Positions 11,716-18,320 of a stretch of DNA of 64,000 nt are shown piece by piece. The translations under genes and the position numbers were made by a program. Source of the DNA: Epithemia pelagica (Eukaryota; Protista; Bacillariophyta); NCBI GenBank assembly GCA_946965045.2, contig OX337241.1:2418001-2482000 (forward strand), written 5' to 3'. Numbering within the stretch: the stretch's first letter is position 1; each line of letters opens with the position of its first letter. The notes under the pieces were generated by a model, which saw only the letters and a list, made by a program, of their open reading frames with translations, was not told where the DNA came from and did not search any database.

Positions 11716-11745
11716 TTACCGTAAAATCACATCTATTGCACCATC
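11716..11745 (+). repeat. Left terminal inverted repeat of the MULE-like element
   Basis: ttaccgtaaaatcacatctattgcaccatc is the reverse complement of 18290-18320 apart from one A in the A-run. Confidence 0.88.
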
Positions 11746-12142: not shown

Positions 12143-15100
12143 ATGGTGGACAATAACGCTCAGCCCCTATCTGAGGATAACCTGGTTCCTATCCAAGATC
12201 TAACACAACAATACCTGGATGATCTCTTTGCATCATTGGACAAAGAATGGCACTCGCCACTACAATTCCAAATGCATGTAGGCAACAATTGTGCCAACAG
12301 TGACACAACTGTGGAACTGGACATTTGTGCCTTCTTTGGCCGACTACAAGCAGCGAATGGCATCAAGGGCAAGTACGCATACTTTGATCGTAGCACATAC
12401 CCTCCTCTCCAATCTGCAGATGAACTCTCAAAGGAAGGCAATTCAATGGCAAATCTTCACCAAGATTTAGTTGCAAAATCTTTAACATCCGGTTTTGTTC
12501 TTGTGAGCAACGGTAACTCCACCAAGAATTCTGCGCTTGCTTCCCGTAAACACTTCCCTGAAGGAAGTTCCCCTCCCTTTTTTTTCAAGAACCTTTTGAT
12601 GTGAACGTTACAGAGTCTACCGAAAGCGTAAAGCAAGTGATGAACCTTCCATTCAGCAATACCGTGGCATTTCTTTGCACAACAATCAACGAGCTAATAG
12701 TCGAGGACCGGAGGGTAGGAAACAAGCGCGTAAACGCATCACCAACCGAGCACTACATCGTGATCATACTTGCTCTTTTCATTTCACGGTCTTTGCCAAT
12801 TCCAAAGGTTTCTATATCACCAGAGTCGCCGGGAATGCATGTCACTGCAACCACATGAAGAAGATGTCATCTGACATTCCATTTCGCATTAGGAACTTTA
12901 CTGCTCAACAACGCAAACGTGCGGGTGAACTTGGCAATGCATTTACAGGACCAGCGGCTGGTCGCAACTACTTCCACGCTAATGGCAATTTGACCATTAC
13001 TCGTGATCAAATGCGATATGCTTTTCGTGTGACTGACACAACAGGAATGTACCACTTTGATGGAATACGTGCATCTGCAGAAGCCGTAGTTGAATGGCTT
13101 CGTACTGCCGAAAGTTTAAGCTACTGCATTTGGGGAGCGCGCCCAGACAGTGTTACCGATGCTCATATGGAACGGCAGTCAGGGTTAATCTTCAATGAGA
13201 ACAAAGAAGAAGATGGGAACCACAGTGTTTCAGCCTTGACTCACTTTTGTCAAGAGATCCTCCATGAATATACTACTGAAATGGAAAATCTGAAACTTGA
13301 TGTTGACCAGAATATGTTCATTGCTTGTGCTTGGATCACGAATAAGGAGCGGCGAATGTTTCGACTGTTTCCGCATGTACTGAAGATTGATGTCACCAAA
13401 GGAACAAATAGAGAAAACCGCCCCTTAATGACTGTGTCAATGCGCACGGCCTATGGAAAATATCTTGTCATCATGCGAATGTTTCTATCCAATGAGAGAA
13501 GAACAACATTTCGATGGGTTTTCTGCATTGCTTTTCCGACTCTTCTTGGAACACAGTGGATAGCACGGGTCAAGGCCATAGTAACTGATGGAGACTCCCA
13601 TGAAATTGAAGAATTGGAAGAATTGATGCGTCGATACATGCCACACTGCATCAGAATCCGTTGTGGCTGGCATATCATTTTCAAGGGTTGGAGTAGGCAG
13701 TGCTCCATTGAGGGAGCAATTCCACGGGAATACAAACGCACATACCGGCAATTTGCAACCACTGTAAAGAAGTGGTGTTACTCATTCATGTATCCACGCT
13801 ACTGTGAAAGTGAACACGAACTCCACATCTCAAAATGTCTTCTTCTTGCCTTTGTTTACTCCAGGCCTGTTCGCACTTTCTTGACCCCCCAGCTCCGGAA
13901 AGTTATCCACAACTTTCTTATTGGCTATGTCTTTGTTCACGACAGGCACTTGTGCTTCCATTATCGTAAAGGAATCTGCTATTATGAAGAATCGACAAAC
14001 AGCAGTCATGAAGGCACAAATCTTGGCTTAAAGGAACATTCTGCACCAGTGTTGGCCAACAGAACTGTTGCATTCAATGCAGCTATGCTCAAGCTCCAGT
14101 CTGACATGGCCATTGATGAACAGATGCATCGTGCGTCCTCAAGTGTAGAAGCAACGGCCACCTGGACAAACCGCCTTCCAGCCAACGGTTTTGTCACAGA
14201 ATTGTGTCTTGATCTGGCAACAAAATCATGGAATTTCGGGAAGAACTATAGTGTCCGTCGTGCACCTGTCCCCTTTTCTCCATGGCAATGGCACGTTGTT
14301 ATAAGCGACCCCTCTATTGTCAACAATGAAAAAAAACATTTGCTTCCTGTGTGGCATCGCACTCGATGTGTACATCTGAACAAAATGGGACGCCTGGAGT
14401 GCACCTGTATGTCTTTTGAACAACGCGGGATACCATGTGCTCACCAAGCAGCTGTGCTTATGCACGAGTATCCTAGCTACAAAGGATTTACCCACCATGA
14501 TGTGAGTATTGTGTGGTGGAAGAAACATGTCTTCCTTGGTCTCCGTGACGGGAATAACAATGTTGATGAGTGCATCCAGCACTTGCTGGACAACGACATA
14601 TCAGGACCTAAATTTCCCCTTCCCCTTCAAAATATAGATGGCTGGACAGAAGGCCCGTACAACACGGGAGACAATCCCATCAAATTCAAACATCTGCACG
14701 TTGATCCAAAAAGTAGTTGTGTGAACTATACAGAAGATCAAATACTGCGTGCTATCAATACATTTGGAGGAAGCCTTGTCTCAAATGCAACAGCAACAAC
14801 AACAACAACAAGGGAAACGGAGATATGTCCCGATCCTGGATATCTGTCCCAAGAATGTTTTGTCACAAATGATGACATCACAAACAATGCTTACACAACC
14901 CAAATGCCAGCATTTCCTTCGTTTACAGATGGCCAAGGCACGTACGACGCGCATTTCTCCACCCAGGAGAGTGAGGAGAATGAAATTTTCCTGCAGGCAA
15001 TTGAAGAAGAAGCTGGGGAGCAAATGACAACACAACAATTCATTTCATGTATTCGCGAAGAGGTTTCAGAACTACAGGATCTTTTCCGGTCTGGTAACTA

Positions 15101-15290
15101 TGTCGCTTCTGATCACAATCTTTTATCCCATCTTGAGTCATTTCGCCAACTACGTCGAGACATACGCCGGAAAATGGCAGAACGGGGACATCACAACCAA
15201 GGTCAGGAATGGGTTTCGGCCAATGCTGAACAAACCCAGCATAAACGTCGTTTCCGTGGTGCCACATTAGGTCTGACGTCTTTCACCTAG
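12143..15290 (+). pseudogene. MULE-family DDE transposase with SWIM zinc finger; 5' part disrupted (frameshift at T8 run 12578-12585 plus TGA at 12597-12599) unless removed by an intron
   Basis: Motifs LKIDVTKGTNRENRPL (D1), IVTDGDSHE (D2), RCGWH (CxxH), SHEGTN (E) and SWIM CTCMSFEQRGIPCAH in ORF 12675-15290. Its frame is open upstream to 12600. The N-terminal piece (ATG 12143 to about 12585) is in another frame. Confidence 0.8.
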
Positions 15291-15356
15291 TTTGTAAAAC
15301 TCCTATAACAGATCTAAACAATATTGTGCGTTTGTTTATGCAACATATGTTTTACT

Positions 15357-16778
15357 TTAATGACTTGTTTTGTTCTTGGCAGCTGCCAAAATTGCTTTTT
15401 CATTGTCCGTGATAGAAATTGTGTTGTCGTTCTTACCCACCACTGCAGTCTTCAAATAGCATGTCAGACAAAAGATGTCATGTTTGGTTGCCCGCTTGGA
15501 GACACAATGGTACTCAAGAGGATTGAAAATGATGATGTCGAGGTGTCGTAACGCCACAACTTGTCCATGTTCTGAGAAGACAAATTGAGCCAAAACTTCA
15601 TCCTTGTCTTTGTTACTTGGTTCCACAAGCATGACGACAGAAATGGACAGACCAAAGTCGTTGTCTGTATGGGCTTGAAGGAAAACGTTTCGTCCGAACG
15701 CAACAGAGGAGAAGAAATGTGTACTTTTCCCCTTGTGGGACCACAACTTGAATTCACCATTTCTTGCAGCGTTCTCGAACGCAAAAGAATAAGACCAGTC
15801 AATCCATTTTTCCAGCTGTGTCTCAAGCTGTTTGATGAATTGTAAGATTACCCATTTCTCCTTTGCTTTCAACTTAGAAAACTTTGAATCTACCAGCCCT
15901 TTTCTTCCCCGATTTGCATGGACACCAAGAGTGATGTAGTTTGTCTTGTGTTCATCACATCCGACATAACGTGACTTGCCACGTGATTGATGGTTGCATG
16001 TTGTCTCCAACTTCTCAAGAACATCAAGTAGGTACTGTGTCACATTATCACTTGTTAGAATTTGACGTGGCGGTTTGAGAAACGCAGGTAGTTTCTGGTT
16101 ATCTGGAGGAAAGATACTTCCTTGGTCACCAGACTCTCCAATTACTTTCCAGCTTGACAAGGAAACAGGGTGGGGGACATTTGGAGTGCATTTGGATAGC
16201 TCCAGCGGACCATCGGTAGGGTCATTTGTGAAGACTAGGCAGAACTTTTGTAGAACAGAAGAAGAAATCTTCAATGAATCAGGTGCTTCGGTAATCTCTT
16301 TCAATGCGTCTTCCTGCTTTTGTCTCTTCTTATTCCGGCAATATCGTTGTGCAGAAGACCTTGGCATGGAAGATGCTTTGGCAACCAAAGCAGCAACTTG
16401 TGTCCTTTGAGAACATGGTTTGTTGGACTTGAACACATGAAAAGCATTAGTAACATCAAAGCCTGTATGTTCTTCAGCTATGTTCTGCAGAATCTCATCC
16501 TGACTTAATCTCCGTGCAAGCCCCCCCGTACTTTTGTTGGCATGTACATTTGAAGATGTACTGCCTAAGCACTGGGCGGTGAGAGCCTGACCATTATGGT
16601 CTGGTTCTAAACGACCTCCCTTGAGGGCTTGCTTGGACATCACCCACGACAAATCCTGATGTAGACAACCAAAAAGACCCCAAATTCCAAAATCAAATCG
16701 CTTCTGAAGGACCAAAGCAATCAAACCAAGCAAGGTATCGTTAGAACTGTCTTGAAAAAGGGCTTTCCAACGAGCCAT
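15357..16778 (-). CDS. TET/JBP-like Fe(II)-dependent dioxygenase (473 aa ORF)
   Basis: C-terminal double-stranded beta-helix signature FSSVAFGRNVFLQAHTDNDF (HxD)...IIIFNPLEYHCVS (distal His)...CLTCYLK. The spacing resembles TET/JBP enzymes. The true 5' end is uncertain because it lies in the tandem array. Confidence 0.7.
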   Translation of the reverse strand: MARWKALFQDSSNDTLLGLIALVLQKRFDFGIWGLFGCLHQDLSWVMSKQALKGGRLEPDHNGQALTAQCLGSTSSNVHANKSTGGLARRLSQDEILQNIAEEHTGFDVTNAFHVFKSNKPCSQRTQVAALVAKASSMPRSSAQRYCRNKKRQKQEDALKEITEAPDSLKISSSVLQKFCLVFTNDPTDGPLELSKCTPNVPHPVSLSSWKVIGESGDQGSIFPPDNQKLPAFLKPPRQILTSDNVTQYLLDVLEKLETTCNHQSRGKSRYVGCDEHKTNYITLGVHANRGRKGLVDSKFSKLKAKEKWVILQFIKQLETQLEKWIDWSYSFAFENAARNGEFKLWSHKGKSTHFFSSVAFGRNVFLQAHTDNDFGLSISVVMLVEPSNKDKDEVLAQFVFSEHGQVVALRHLDIIIFNPLEYHCVSKRATKHDIFCLTCYLKTAVVGKNDNTISITDNEKAILAAAKNKTSH

Positions 16779-17858
16779 TCAATGTTGAAATCCGACTTAC
16801 ATGTAGAAAGTTATCAAGGGTAGTAGGAGAGGGTGCTGGAACAGCCACCAAAAAGACCCCAAATTCCAAAATCAAATCGCTTCTGAAGGACCAAAGCAAT
16901 CAAACCAAGCAAGGTATCGTTAGAACTGTCTTGAAAAAGGGCTTTCCAACGAGCCATTCAATGTTGAAATCCGACTTGCATGTAGAAAGTTATTAAGGGT
17001 AGTAGGAGAGGGTGCTGGAACGGCCACCAAAAAGACCCCAAATTCCAAAATCAAATCGCTTCTGAAGGACCAAAGCAATCAAACCAAGCAAGGTATCGTT
17101 AGAACTGTCTTGAAAAAGGGCTTTCCAACGAGCCATTCAATGTTGAAATCCGACTTACATGTAGAAAGTTATCAAGGGTAGTAGGAGAGGGTGCTGGAAC
17201 AGCCACCAAAAAGACCCCAAATTCCAAAATCAAATCGCTTCTGAAGGACCAAAGCAATCAAACCAAGCAAGGTATCGTTAGAACTGTCTTGAAAAAGGGC
17301 TTTCCAACGAGCCATTCAATGTTGAAATCCGACTTGCATGTAGAAAGTTATTAAGGGTAGTAGGAGAGGGTGCTGGAACAGCCACCAAAAAGACCCCAAA
17401 TTCCAAAATCAAATCGCTTCTGAAGGACCAAAGCAATCAAACCAAGCAAGGTATCGTTAGAACTGTCTTGAAAAAGGGCTTTCCAACGAGCCATTCAATG
17501 TTGAAATCCGACTTGCATGTAGAAAGTTATTAAGGGTAGTAGGAGAGGGTGCTGGAACGGCCACCAAAAAGACCCCAAATTCCAAAATCAAATCGCTTCT
17601 GAAGGACCAAAGCAATCAAACCAAGCAAGGTATCGTTAGAACTGTCTTGAAAAAGGGCTTTCCAACGAGCCATTCAATGTTGAAATCCGACTTACATGTA
17701 GAAAGTTATCAAGGGTAGTAGGAGAGGGTGCTGGAACAGCCACCAAAAAGACCCCAAATTCCAAAATCAAATCGCTTCTGAAGGACCAAAGCAATCAAAC
17801 CAAGCAAGGTATCGTTAGAACTGTCTTGAAAAAGGGCTTTCCAACAAGCCATTCAATG
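16669..17858. repeat. Tandem array, 179-bp unit x about 6.6 copies
   Basis: ccaaaaagacccc recurs at 16669, 16848, 17027, 17206, 17385, 17564 and 17743. Full units differ at only three transition sites. Confidence 0.97.
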
Positions 17859-18289: not shown

Positions 18290-18320
18290 GATGGTGCAAT
18301 AGATGTGATTTTTACGGTAA
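18290..18320 (-). repeat. Right terminal inverted repeat of the MULE-like element
   Basis: gatggtgcaatagatgtgatttttacggtaa. Confidence 0.88.

What the first reader, a model, noticed from the sequence alone, without database searches (positions are those of the whole stretch)
15357..15700. The TET-like domain appears to lack the canonical 2-oxoglutarate-binding arginine
Seen: the last strand reads YHCVSKRATKHDIFCLTCYLK. Aligned on the Tyr with the TET-type R-x-S-L-V-x-Y strand, the Arg position is Ile, while the HxD and distal His iron ligands are intact. Established: the Chlamydomonas TET homologue CMD1 keeps the Fe ligands, does not use 2OG, and uses ascorbate to make glyceryl-methylcytosine. 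Inference: this enzyme could use another co-substrate or make a non-standard base.
Basis: inference. Interest (0 to 1): 0.72.

Follow-up and report, generated by a model that had tools for sequence, protein, structure and literature searches.

The report
Transposon TET-like dioxygenase lacking cofactor arginine
A jumping gene in a probable diatom carries an enzyme folded like the TET DNA-demethylation enzymes, and it and its whole large, unannotated family have a greasy residue where every solved TET enzyme has the arginine that grips 2-oxoglutarate; how it binds its co-substrate is still open.

Summary
ORF 15357-16778(-) encodes a 473-aa protein with H370-x-D372, distal H424 and the strand I435-F-C-L-T-C-Y441-L-K443. 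Its C-terminal domain folds with high confidence (pLDDT 93.9). The best structural matches are TET2, NgTET1, CcTet and CMD1 (Z 15-17).

A model cut after Y441 aligns its last residue to TET2 Y1902, NgTET1 F295, CcTet F391 and CMD1 F416 in all 16 listed entries of those proteins. I435 therefore sits where those enzymes have R1896, R289, R385 and R410. None of 174 family members has Arg or Lys there.

The family is large (974 representatives at 50% identity), centred on diatoms and missed by Pfam. It is carried by Mutator (this window) and Helitron elements.

The interpretation (another co-substrate, an unusual base) cannot be decided. The CMD1 analogy is imprecise, because CMD1 keeps its Arg in sequence, and most CMD1 ascorbate contacts are not matched here. 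Conserved basic residues (R411, R429, K428, R363) lie near the deep end of the barrel and could replace the Arg, but the model's coordinates could not be read.

I favour 2-oxoglutarate held by a relocated basic residue (about 0.55). Follow-ups on other pieces of this genome reached the same family-wide conclusion.

The parts
15357..16778 (-). ORF of 473 aa (P0001), a TET/JBP-fold dioxygenase. The stop codon is 15357-15359. The first ~38 residues are encoded by the 179-bp tandem repeat, so the true start is probably further downstream.
15360..16166 (-). Catalytic double-stranded beta-helix domain, residues 205-473, as modelled.
   Evidence: AlphaFold2 pLDDT 93.9, pTM 0.90. Foldseek's top 24 hits are all TET-family chains. 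VIA Z values: TET2 16.9, NgTET1 16.2, CcTet 15.9, CMD1 14.9.
15657..15671 (-). H370-T-D372-N-D374: two iron ligands plus a conserved Asp near the base pocket.
   Evidence: H370 is 68/68; D372 and D374 are 67/68.
15507..15509 (-). H424, the distal iron ligand (strand VII).
   Evidence: Invariant, 68/68.
15474..15476 (-). I435, at the structural position of the canonical 2OG C5-carboxylate Arg (TET2 R1896, NgTET1 R289, CcTet R385, CMD1 R410).
   Evidence: Never R/K in 174 family sequences.
15450..15476 (-). Strand VIII, I435-F-C437-L-T439-C-Y441-L-K443. Y441 is equivalent to the base-stacking Tyr/Phe of TETs, and K443 occupies the position of the base-contacting His/Arg.
   Evidence: Y441 is 65/68 and K443 68/68.
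15492..15500 (-). S427-K428-R429 in the arch between strands VII and VIII. These are candidate replacement contacts for the co-substrate carboxylate.
   Evidence: S427 is 172/178. Position 429 is R/K in 154/178. K428 occurs only in this subfamily (17/178).
15546..15548 (-). R411 at the end of strand V (motif A-L-R-P-G-D), a second candidate replacement basic residue.
   Evidence: R/K in 166/178. It lies two residues after the position that, by offset, matches CcTet Y361, which hydrogen-bonds the distal carboxylate of N-oxalylglycine, the 2OG analogue in the crystals.
15909..15911 (-). R290, a probable counterpart of the N-terminal Arg that stacks on the flipped base and touches the co-substrate (TET2 R1261, CMD1 R244, CcTet R205).
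   Evidence: 62/68 Arg. The mapping is only approximate, from alignment offsets.
12675..15290 (+). Mutator-type (MULE) transposase ORF of 871 aa, tail-to-tail with the dioxygenase gene.
   Evidence: Pfam ZSWIM1-3_RNaseH-like 7e-12, MULE 3.7e-09, SWIM 4.5e-05.
11723..11745 (.). Left terminal inverted repeat of the element.
   Evidence: 23 nt, 100% complementary to 18290-18312. It extends to 11717 with one indel.
18290..18312 (.). Right terminal inverted repeat of the element.
16668..17858 (.). 179-bp tandem array, 6.7 copies, overlapping the 5' end of the dioxygenase ORF.

Best explanation
Shown: the gene is cargo of a Mutator-type DNA transposon. It encodes an Fe(II) dioxygenase with the TET/JBP fold. 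The iron triad (H370, D372, H424) is intact. So are the base-stacking Tyr (Y441), a basic residue at the base-contact position (K443) and an Asp beside the HxD motif (D374). The strand-VIII arginine that holds the C5-carboxylate of 2-oxoglutarate in every solved TET is Ile here and Val/Ile across the whole family.

Inferred: the enzyme oxidises 5-methylcytosine (or another 5-methylpyrimidine) in DNA. This would help the element escape cytosine-methylation silencing, as proposed for the transposon-borne TETs of fungi.

Inferred, and the least certain step: it still uses 2-oxoglutarate or a close 2-oxo acid. The distal carboxylate would be held by a basic residue recruited from another part of the barrel's deep end: R411 at the end of strand V, K428/R429 in the VII-VIII arch, or R363. 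S427, S428 and Y398 would help. JmjC/FIH-type oxygenases do something similar with a Lys from another strand.
For: Fold: AlphaFold2 pLDDT 93.9. Foldseek's top 24 hits are all TET-family chains. VIA Z is 16.9 to 14.9 for TET2, NgTET1, CcTet and CMD1, against at most 13.5 for FTO and AlkB homologues.

Register: the truncated model ends on Y1902, F295, F391 and F416 in 16 of 16 entries.

Family: 974 representatives at E<=1e-3. H370, H424 and K443 are invariant. D372, D374 and Y441 are at least 96% conserved. Position 435 is never basic.

Conserved polar or basic residues that the model's strand order puts at the deep end: R411 93%, R429 87%, S427 97%, Y398 91%.

Hydrophobic 2OG contacts of CcTet (T323, L339, V378) map by offset to L367, M383 and V426, so the pocket body looks TET-like.

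Transposon context: a MULE/SWIM transposase lies next door and TIRs flank both genes. The homologue P0002 also sits tail-to-tail with a ZSWIM/MULE-like gene, and P0009 lies beside a Helitron. Fungal precedent: PMC12730594. 5mC marks transposons in diatoms: PMC9998398 (abstract).
Against: No coordinates could be read, so no basic residue has been shown to reach the carboxylate site.

R411 sits in an R-P-G-D turn with invariant D414, and R429 lies near the conserved acidic residue 434. Either could be a purely structural salt bridge.

R411 and R429 are lost independently of each other (2 double losses observed, 1.3 expected), so there is no sign that one backs up the other.

No activity, expression or base-modification data exist. 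The sequencing runs available were contigs only.

Substrate assignment (5mC rather than T, or RNA) rests on analogy alone.
Confidence: 0.55

Rival explanations
1. The family has given up 2-oxoglutarate. With a hydrophobic residue at the Arg position, the deep pocket takes a different co-substrate, either ascorbate as in CMD1 or a shorter or less polar 2-oxo acid. The product may then be a non-standard base rather than 5hmC.
For: The Arg that defines 2OG binding in TET, AlkB and most related oxygenases is absent in 174 of 174 members, so the loss is old and tolerated. R385A abolishes CcTet activity. CMD1 shows that the TET fold can switch co-substrate and chemistry. S/T439 matches CMD1 S414, which contacts ascorbate through a water molecule.
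Against: CMD1 keeps its Arg in sequence and loses 2OG through W358 and a turned-away R410. Here the W358 position is M383 (His, Leu or Gln in relatives). CMD1's essential T337 and T399 correspond to G362 and V426. Two to four conserved basic residues and several Ser/Tyr remain near the deep end. JmjC/FIH enzymes show that the strand-VIII Arg is dispensable for 2OG use (established knowledge).
Confidence: 0.25
2. The protein is a working 2OG enzyme of the TET fold but does not act on 5mC in DNA. It might be a thymine hydroxylase like JBP or the dinoflagellate 5hmU enzyme, or it might act on RNA.
For: K443 replaces the His/Arg that reads the pyrimidine edge. The conserved Asp is at H+4 (D374) rather than H+5 as in TET2, NgTET1 and CMD1. 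AlkB and FTO relatives score only about 3 Z units lower.
Against: The stacking Tyr and an acidic residue next to the HxD motif fit cytosine N4 recognition as described for TETs. Transposon carriage fits an anti-5mC role.
Confidence: 0.12
3. The protein is catalytically dead. It would be a decaying passenger gene or a DNA-binding protein that merely keeps the fold.
For: Some copies in the same genome are broken. P0003 is a frameshifted paralogue, and a 1-nt deletion at 15725 is seen in contigs of runs X2 and X3. One family member, P0047, has lost D372, R290, R411 and R429 together.
Against: This copy is an intact ORF. The iron triad and about 20 other positions are invariant or nearly so across sequences that are only about 30% identical. 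That requires long purifying selection on catalysis.
Confidence: 0.06

Closest known systems
TET/JBP (5-methylpyrimidine) dioxygenases: human TET2, Naegleria NgTET1, Coprinopsis CcTet
   Same: Best structural matches (Z 15.9-16.9, about 210-245 residues aligned). HxD...H iron triad. An aromatic residue that stacks the flipped base, followed two residues later by a polar or basic residue. A conserved N-terminal Arg (R290).
   Different: The strand-VIII Arg of the R-x5-aromatic motif is Ile/Val. The Ser two residues after it is Cys. There is no Pfam Tet_JBP hit for this protein, and only 4 of 68 relatives reach E about 1e-3. No sequence-level hit to any PDB chain. The acidic residue is at H+4, not H+5.
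Chlamydomonas CMD1 (ascorbate-dependent 5-glyceryl-methylcytosine synthase)
   Same: TET fold (Z 14.9). Iron triad kept. The canonical 2OG salt bridge is not available. Ser at aromatic-2 (CMD1 S414, here T439).
   Different: CMD1 retains the Arg (R410) but turns it away and blocks the site with W358. Here the Arg itself is replaced and there is no Trp at the W358 offset. CMD1's T337 and T399 ascorbate contacts are G362 and V426 here.
Transposon-encoded TET/JBP genes of fungi (Kyakuja-Dileera-Zisupton, Plavaka, Helitron and others; Pfam 2OG-FeII_Oxy_6)
   Same: A TET-fold gene carried as cargo by several unrelated DNA-transposon superfamilies, proposed to counter methylation silencing (PMC12730594). 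Atlas TM 0.72 to the basidiomycete 2OG-FeII_Oxy_6 cluster.
   Different: Different host lineage (nearest Atlas clusters are Bacillariophyta). Different carrier here (Mutator/MULE, which is not among the carriers listed in that paper's abstract). Loss of the Arg.
JmjC/FIH-type 2OG oxygenases
   Same: Working 2OG enzymes that lack the strand-VIII Arg and bind the C5-carboxylate with a Lys from another strand plus Tyr/Thr (established knowledge). This is the proposed logic for the enzyme here.
   Different: A different branch of the superfamily that acts on proteins. No special structural similarity was found here. The comparison is an analogy of mechanism only.

Membership tests
TET/JBP dioxygenases (Pfam PF12851 clan; 5mYOX) | Double-stranded beta-helix with the TET-type N-terminal elaboration, closest in structure to solved TETs | tested here: met
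   Foldseek's top 24 hits are all TET-family chains. VIA Z: TET2 16.9, NgTET1 16.2, CcTet 15.9, CMD1 14.9, next FTO 13.5.
TET/JBP dioxygenases (Pfam PF12851 clan; 5mYOX) | HxD...H iron-binding triad | tested here: met
   H370, D372 and H424 are present. H370 and H424 are invariant in 68 sequences, and D372 is 67/68.
TET/JBP dioxygenases (Pfam PF12851 clan; 5mYOX) | R-x5-aromatic motif: a strand-VIII Arg that salt-bridges the 2OG C5-carboxylate | tested here: not met
   I435 occupies the position. 0 of 174 family sequences have R/K there.
TET/JBP dioxygenases (Pfam PF12851 clan; 5mYOX) | Aromatic residue stacking the flipped pyrimidine, with a polar or basic residue two positions later | tested here: met
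   Y441 aligns to Y1902, F295, F391 and F416. K443 is invariant.
TET/JBP dioxygenases (Pfam PF12851 clan; 5mYOX) | Match to the family's sequence profile above the curated threshold | tested here: not met
   No Pfam hit at E<=1 for this protein. 4 of 68 relatives hit PF12851, best E 0.0011.
TET/JBP dioxygenases (Pfam PF12851 clan; 5mYOX) | 2OG-dependent oxidation of the 5-methyl group of C or T in nucleic acid | not testable with these tools
   Needs enzyme assays and nucleoside mass spectrometry.
CMD1-type ascorbate-dependent TET homologues | Ascorbate-contacting residues (R244, H249, T337, W358, T399, S414), with W358 filling the Arg site | tested here: not met
   By offset from the iron ligands, T337 maps to G362, W358 to M383 and T399 to V426. 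Only S414 is matched, by T439. The offsets assume no indels.
Mutator-like (MULE) DNA transposon with cargo | MULE transposase with a SWIM zinc finger, terminal inverted repeats enclosing both genes, and a 9-10 bp target-site duplication | tested here: inconclusive
   Transposase domains are present. TIRs of 23 nt, 100% complementary, lie at 11723-11745 and 18290-18312. No matching duplication was seen in the immediate flanks.

The most novel reading that the evidence does not exclude
A very large family of TET-fold enzymes, centred on diatoms and carried by transposons, has abandoned 2-oxoglutarate. It uses another co-substrate to write a so far unknown derivative of 5-methylcytosine (or thymine) on transposon DNA. 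This would be a second, independent case after CMD1 of new chemistry in the TET fold, used by mobile elements against host silencing.
Probability: 0.2. Interest if true: 0.85.

Novelty: new variant of a known kind. Interest (0 to 1): 0.6.

Why it matters
TET enzymes are the only known enzymes that act on the methyl group of 5mC, and the Arg that holds 2OG is one of their defining residues; mutating it kills CcTet.

This family has hundreds of diverged members, keeps every other catalytic feature and never has that Arg. Either 2OG can be held in a new way within the TET fold, or the fold has changed co-substrate again, as in CMD1.

I found no paper describing TET homologues in diatoms. Here the genes ride on Mutator and Helitron elements. 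That extends the "transposon carries its own demethylase" idea from fungi to a major group of marine algae, and it gives a concrete enzyme to test.

Tried and rejected
- Sequence searches against PDB, with the single protein and with the 68-sequence profile, gave no TET hit. Residue equivalences therefore had to come from structure.
- The word-index search with the family alignment returned only 7 proteins and no annotated relatives.
- Cluster look-ups gave no names or taxa.
- tblastn of two family members against 50,697 phage genomes found nothing. PHROGs gave only weak hits to an unnamed family. I therefore could not fetch canonical Tet_JBP sequences, and I built no profile-profile alignment against them.
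- Mean-field direct-coupling analysis on 154 sequences was swamped by gap artefacts at the termini and gave no usable contacts.
- I tested whether R411 and R429 back each other up, meaning at least one is always kept. There were 2 double losses against 1.3 expected under independence, so there is no signal and I dropped the argument.
- Ala or Pro at position 429 goes with Tyr at 435 in 4 of the 5 sequences that have Tyr at 435. These are probably one clade, so I treat it as a hint only.
- Read laying gave contigs only. One 151-nt piece from a metatranscriptome (3 mismatches) is the only RNA-library signal. It does not show transcription in this organism.
- The CMD1 paper's structure-based alignment is an image and is not held as text.

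Full report
**What is in the sequence**

The minus strand between 15357 and 16778 carries one ORF of 473 codons. Its translation contains LQAHTDNDFG (H370, D372, D374). It also contains EYHCVSKRATKHDIFCLTCYLK (H424, K428, R429, I435, C437, T439, Y441, K443).

The first ~38 residues are encoded by a 179-bp tandem array (16668-17858, 6.7 copies). Each unit of the array carries the same short ORF. Close homologues align only from about residue 84 onward, so the real start is probably downstream of the first ATG.

**Context**

Tail-to-tail with this gene lies an 871-codon ORF (12675-15290, +). It has ZSWIM1-3 RNaseH-like, MULE and SWIM domains, so it is a Mutator-type transposase. Perfect 23-nt inverted repeats at 11723-11745 and 18290-18312 enclose both genes. 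I saw no target-site duplication in the immediate flanks.

The homologue P0002, on an unrelated long contig, also sits tail-to-tail with a ZSWIM/MULE-like gene. A more distant member, P0009, lies directly beside a Helitron helicase gene. The window holds only this one copy of the family.

**The family**

Pfam, NCBIfam and PDB sequence searches give nothing for this protein. The word-index search found four relatives at 45-52% identity plus a frameshifted 97% paralogue.

A profile of the four intact domains found 974 representatives at E<=1e-3, of which 581 were at E<=1e-10, in the library clustered at 50% identity. All members with a source name are "hypothetical protein". Only 4 of 68 aligned members touch Pfam Tet_JBP, at E about 1e-3, and one touches the fungal 2OG-FeII_Oxy_6 family. 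By shape, the nearest ESM-Atlas clusters are unannotated and labelled Bacillariophyta (TM 0.84 and 0.79). Next come phage Tet_JBP (TM 0.71) and basidiomycete 2OG-FeII_Oxy_6 (TM 0.72).

**Fold**

With the 68-sequence alignment, AlphaFold2 gives pLDDT 93.9 and pTM 0.90 for residues 205-473. Foldseek's first 24 PDB hits are all TET-family chains: CcTet, NgTET1, CMD1 and TET2. VIA-align gives the following Z values:

| Match | Z | Residues aligned |
|---|---|---|
| TET2 | 16.9 | 242 |
| NgTET1 | 16.2 | not quoted |
| CcTet | 15.9 | not quoted |
| CMD1 | 14.9 | not quoted |
| FTO | 13.5 | not quoted |
| ABH3 | 13.4 | not quoted |

The TET assignment is therefore by structure. The margin over the AlkB clade is clear but not huge.

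**The arginine position**

Published structures give one constant spacing in all four solved TET-family proteins:

| Enzyme | 2OG Arg | Stacking aromatic | Base-contact residue | Source |
|---|---|---|---|---|
| TET2 | R1896 | Y1902 | H1904 | PMC7854593, |
| NgTET1 | R289 | F295 | H297 | PMC7854593, |
| CMD1 | R410 | F416 | R418 | PMC7854593, |
| CcTet | R385 | F391 | R393 | PMC11040006, |
| This protein | I435 | Y441 | K443 | |

To test the register without access to coordinates, I folded the domain truncated exactly after Y441 (pLDDT 90.7) and aligned it to the PDB. The last model residue pairs with TET2 1902 in 5 entries, NgTET1 295 in 3, CcTet 391 in 3 and CMD1 416 in 5. In AlkB it pairs with residue 210 and in FTO with residue 322. 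From my own recollection of those structures, which I did not check here, the residue six positions earlier in each (AlkB R204, FTO R316) is their 2OG arginine.

The strand from residue 435 is unbroken in both models (435-441 in the full model, 435-440 in the truncated one). I435 therefore occupies the canonical Arg position.

It is also a family trait. Among 174 sequences the position is V, I, L or F in almost all and never R or K.

**What else is conserved**

In the 68-sequence alignment H370, H424, K443, G285 and N452 are invariant. D372 and D374 are 67/68, Y441 is 65/68, position 439 is S/T in 66/68 and R290 is Arg in 62/68. In the wider set of about 178 sequences the figures are:

| Position | Conservation |
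|---|---|
| S427 | 172/178 |
| Y398 | 162/178 |
| R411 | R/K in 166/178 |
| R429 | R/K in 154/178 |

Such conservation at about 30% pairwise identity argues for a working catalyst, not a decayed passenger gene.

The strand order in the model lets me place R411 (end of strand V), S427-K428-R429 (the arch after strand VII) and R363 (end of strand I) at the deep end of the barrel. That is where the distal carboxylate of 2OG points. This placement is an inference from topology. I could not read side-chain positions.

By offset, the CcTet residues that pack against the 2OG analogue (T323, L339, V378) map to L367, M383 and V426. CcTet Y361, which hydrogen-bonds the distal carboxylate, maps to A409, two residues before R411.

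**Interpretation**

CMD1 does not lack the Arg in sequence. R410 is present but points away, and W358 fills its place. CMD1's essential ascorbate contacts T337, W358 and T399 correspond here to G362, M383 and V426. Only S414 has a counterpart, T439. So there is no CMD1-like ascorbate signature.

On the other side, nothing I could compute shows that R411, K428, R429 or R363 reaches the co-substrate. R411 sits in an R-P-G-D turn with invariant D414, and R429 lies near the acidic position 434, so either could be structural. A test for mutual back-up between R411 and R429 was negative (2 double losses, 1.3 expected).

I therefore rank the readings as follows:

| Reading | Confidence |
|---|---|
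| 2OG, or a close 2-oxo acid, is still used and is held by a relocated basic residue, as JmjC/FIH enzymes do with a Lys from another strand (established knowledge) | about 0.55 |
| A different co-substrate, perhaps a different product | about 0.25 |
| A different nucleic-acid substrate | about 0.12 |
| An inactive protein | about 0.06 |

**Biology**

Transposon-borne TET genes are known in fungi on many transposon superfamilies and are thought to counter methylation silencing (PMC12730594). Diatoms methylate transposons (PMC9998398). My literature searches found no description of TET homologues in diatoms.

Public contigs show the element is multi-copy, with variant copies. These include a 1-nt deletion at 15725 that breaks the dioxygenase frame in some copies, and an internal-deletion derivative. 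No run demonstrated transcription.

**Earlier notes of this scan**

After my own analysis I found that the same claim had been noted on four other pieces of this genome. Three follow-ups had reached the same family-wide conclusion. These are not independent evidence.

What this report adds:
- the truncated-model test of the register;
- the point-by-point comparison with CMD1's ascorbate site;
- the list of candidate replacement residues;
- the negative test for back-up between R411 and R429.

**Limits**

- Model coordinates are not readable with these tools.
- No canonical TET sequences could be obtained for a profile-profile alignment.
- The offset mappings assume no indels.
- The organism is called a diatom only from Atlas cluster labels and earlier notes.

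Noticed in passing
window 16668-17858: A 179-bp tandem array (6.7 copies, 98% matches) runs into the 5' end of the dioxygenase ORF. Every unit carries the same 47-aa ORF beginning MARWKALFQ, so the ORF's first ~38 residues are repeat-encoded and probably not part of the real protein.
   Followed up: partly
window 11717-11745 and 18290-18319: The perfect 23-nt inverted repeats extend outward by about 6 nt with one A-run indel. The 9 nt outside them (AATTAATAT on the left, AGCGCTATG on the right) do not match, so no Mutator-style target-site duplication is visible.
   Followed up: partly
window 12432-16755 (joint seen in run X1): A contig joins 12432 to 16755 with 28 filler letters, skipping 4322 bp. 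This looks like an internal-deletion (non-autonomous) derivative of the element that lacks both genes.
   Followed up: no
window 14924 and 15725: Copies in the public runs differ from the window. A 24-nt insertion lies behind 14924 in the transposase tail. A 1-nt deletion at 15725 would frameshift the dioxygenase just before the HxD motif. P0003 is such a frameshifted paralogue, 97% identical over its first half.
   Followed up: partly
L005:1694-10087: The family member P0009 (626 aa) lies immediately downstream of a 1589-aa Helitron_like_N/PIF1 helicase gene and a DUF6570 gene. The same dioxygenase family is therefore cargo of Helitrons as well as Mutator elements.
   Followed up: no
L001:10325-15399: Beside the P0002 dioxygenase and its ZSWIM/MULE-like neighbour there is an 820-aa gene with Herpes_ori_bp/AAA_30 helicase hits. 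This may be further transposon cargo or a second element.
   Followed up: no
family alignment A3, members P0026, P0029, P0030: The few members with Ala or Pro instead of R429 carry Tyr at position 435, which is otherwise Ile/Val. This is a possible compensating pair that links the two positions, but it is probably a single clade.
   Followed up: partly
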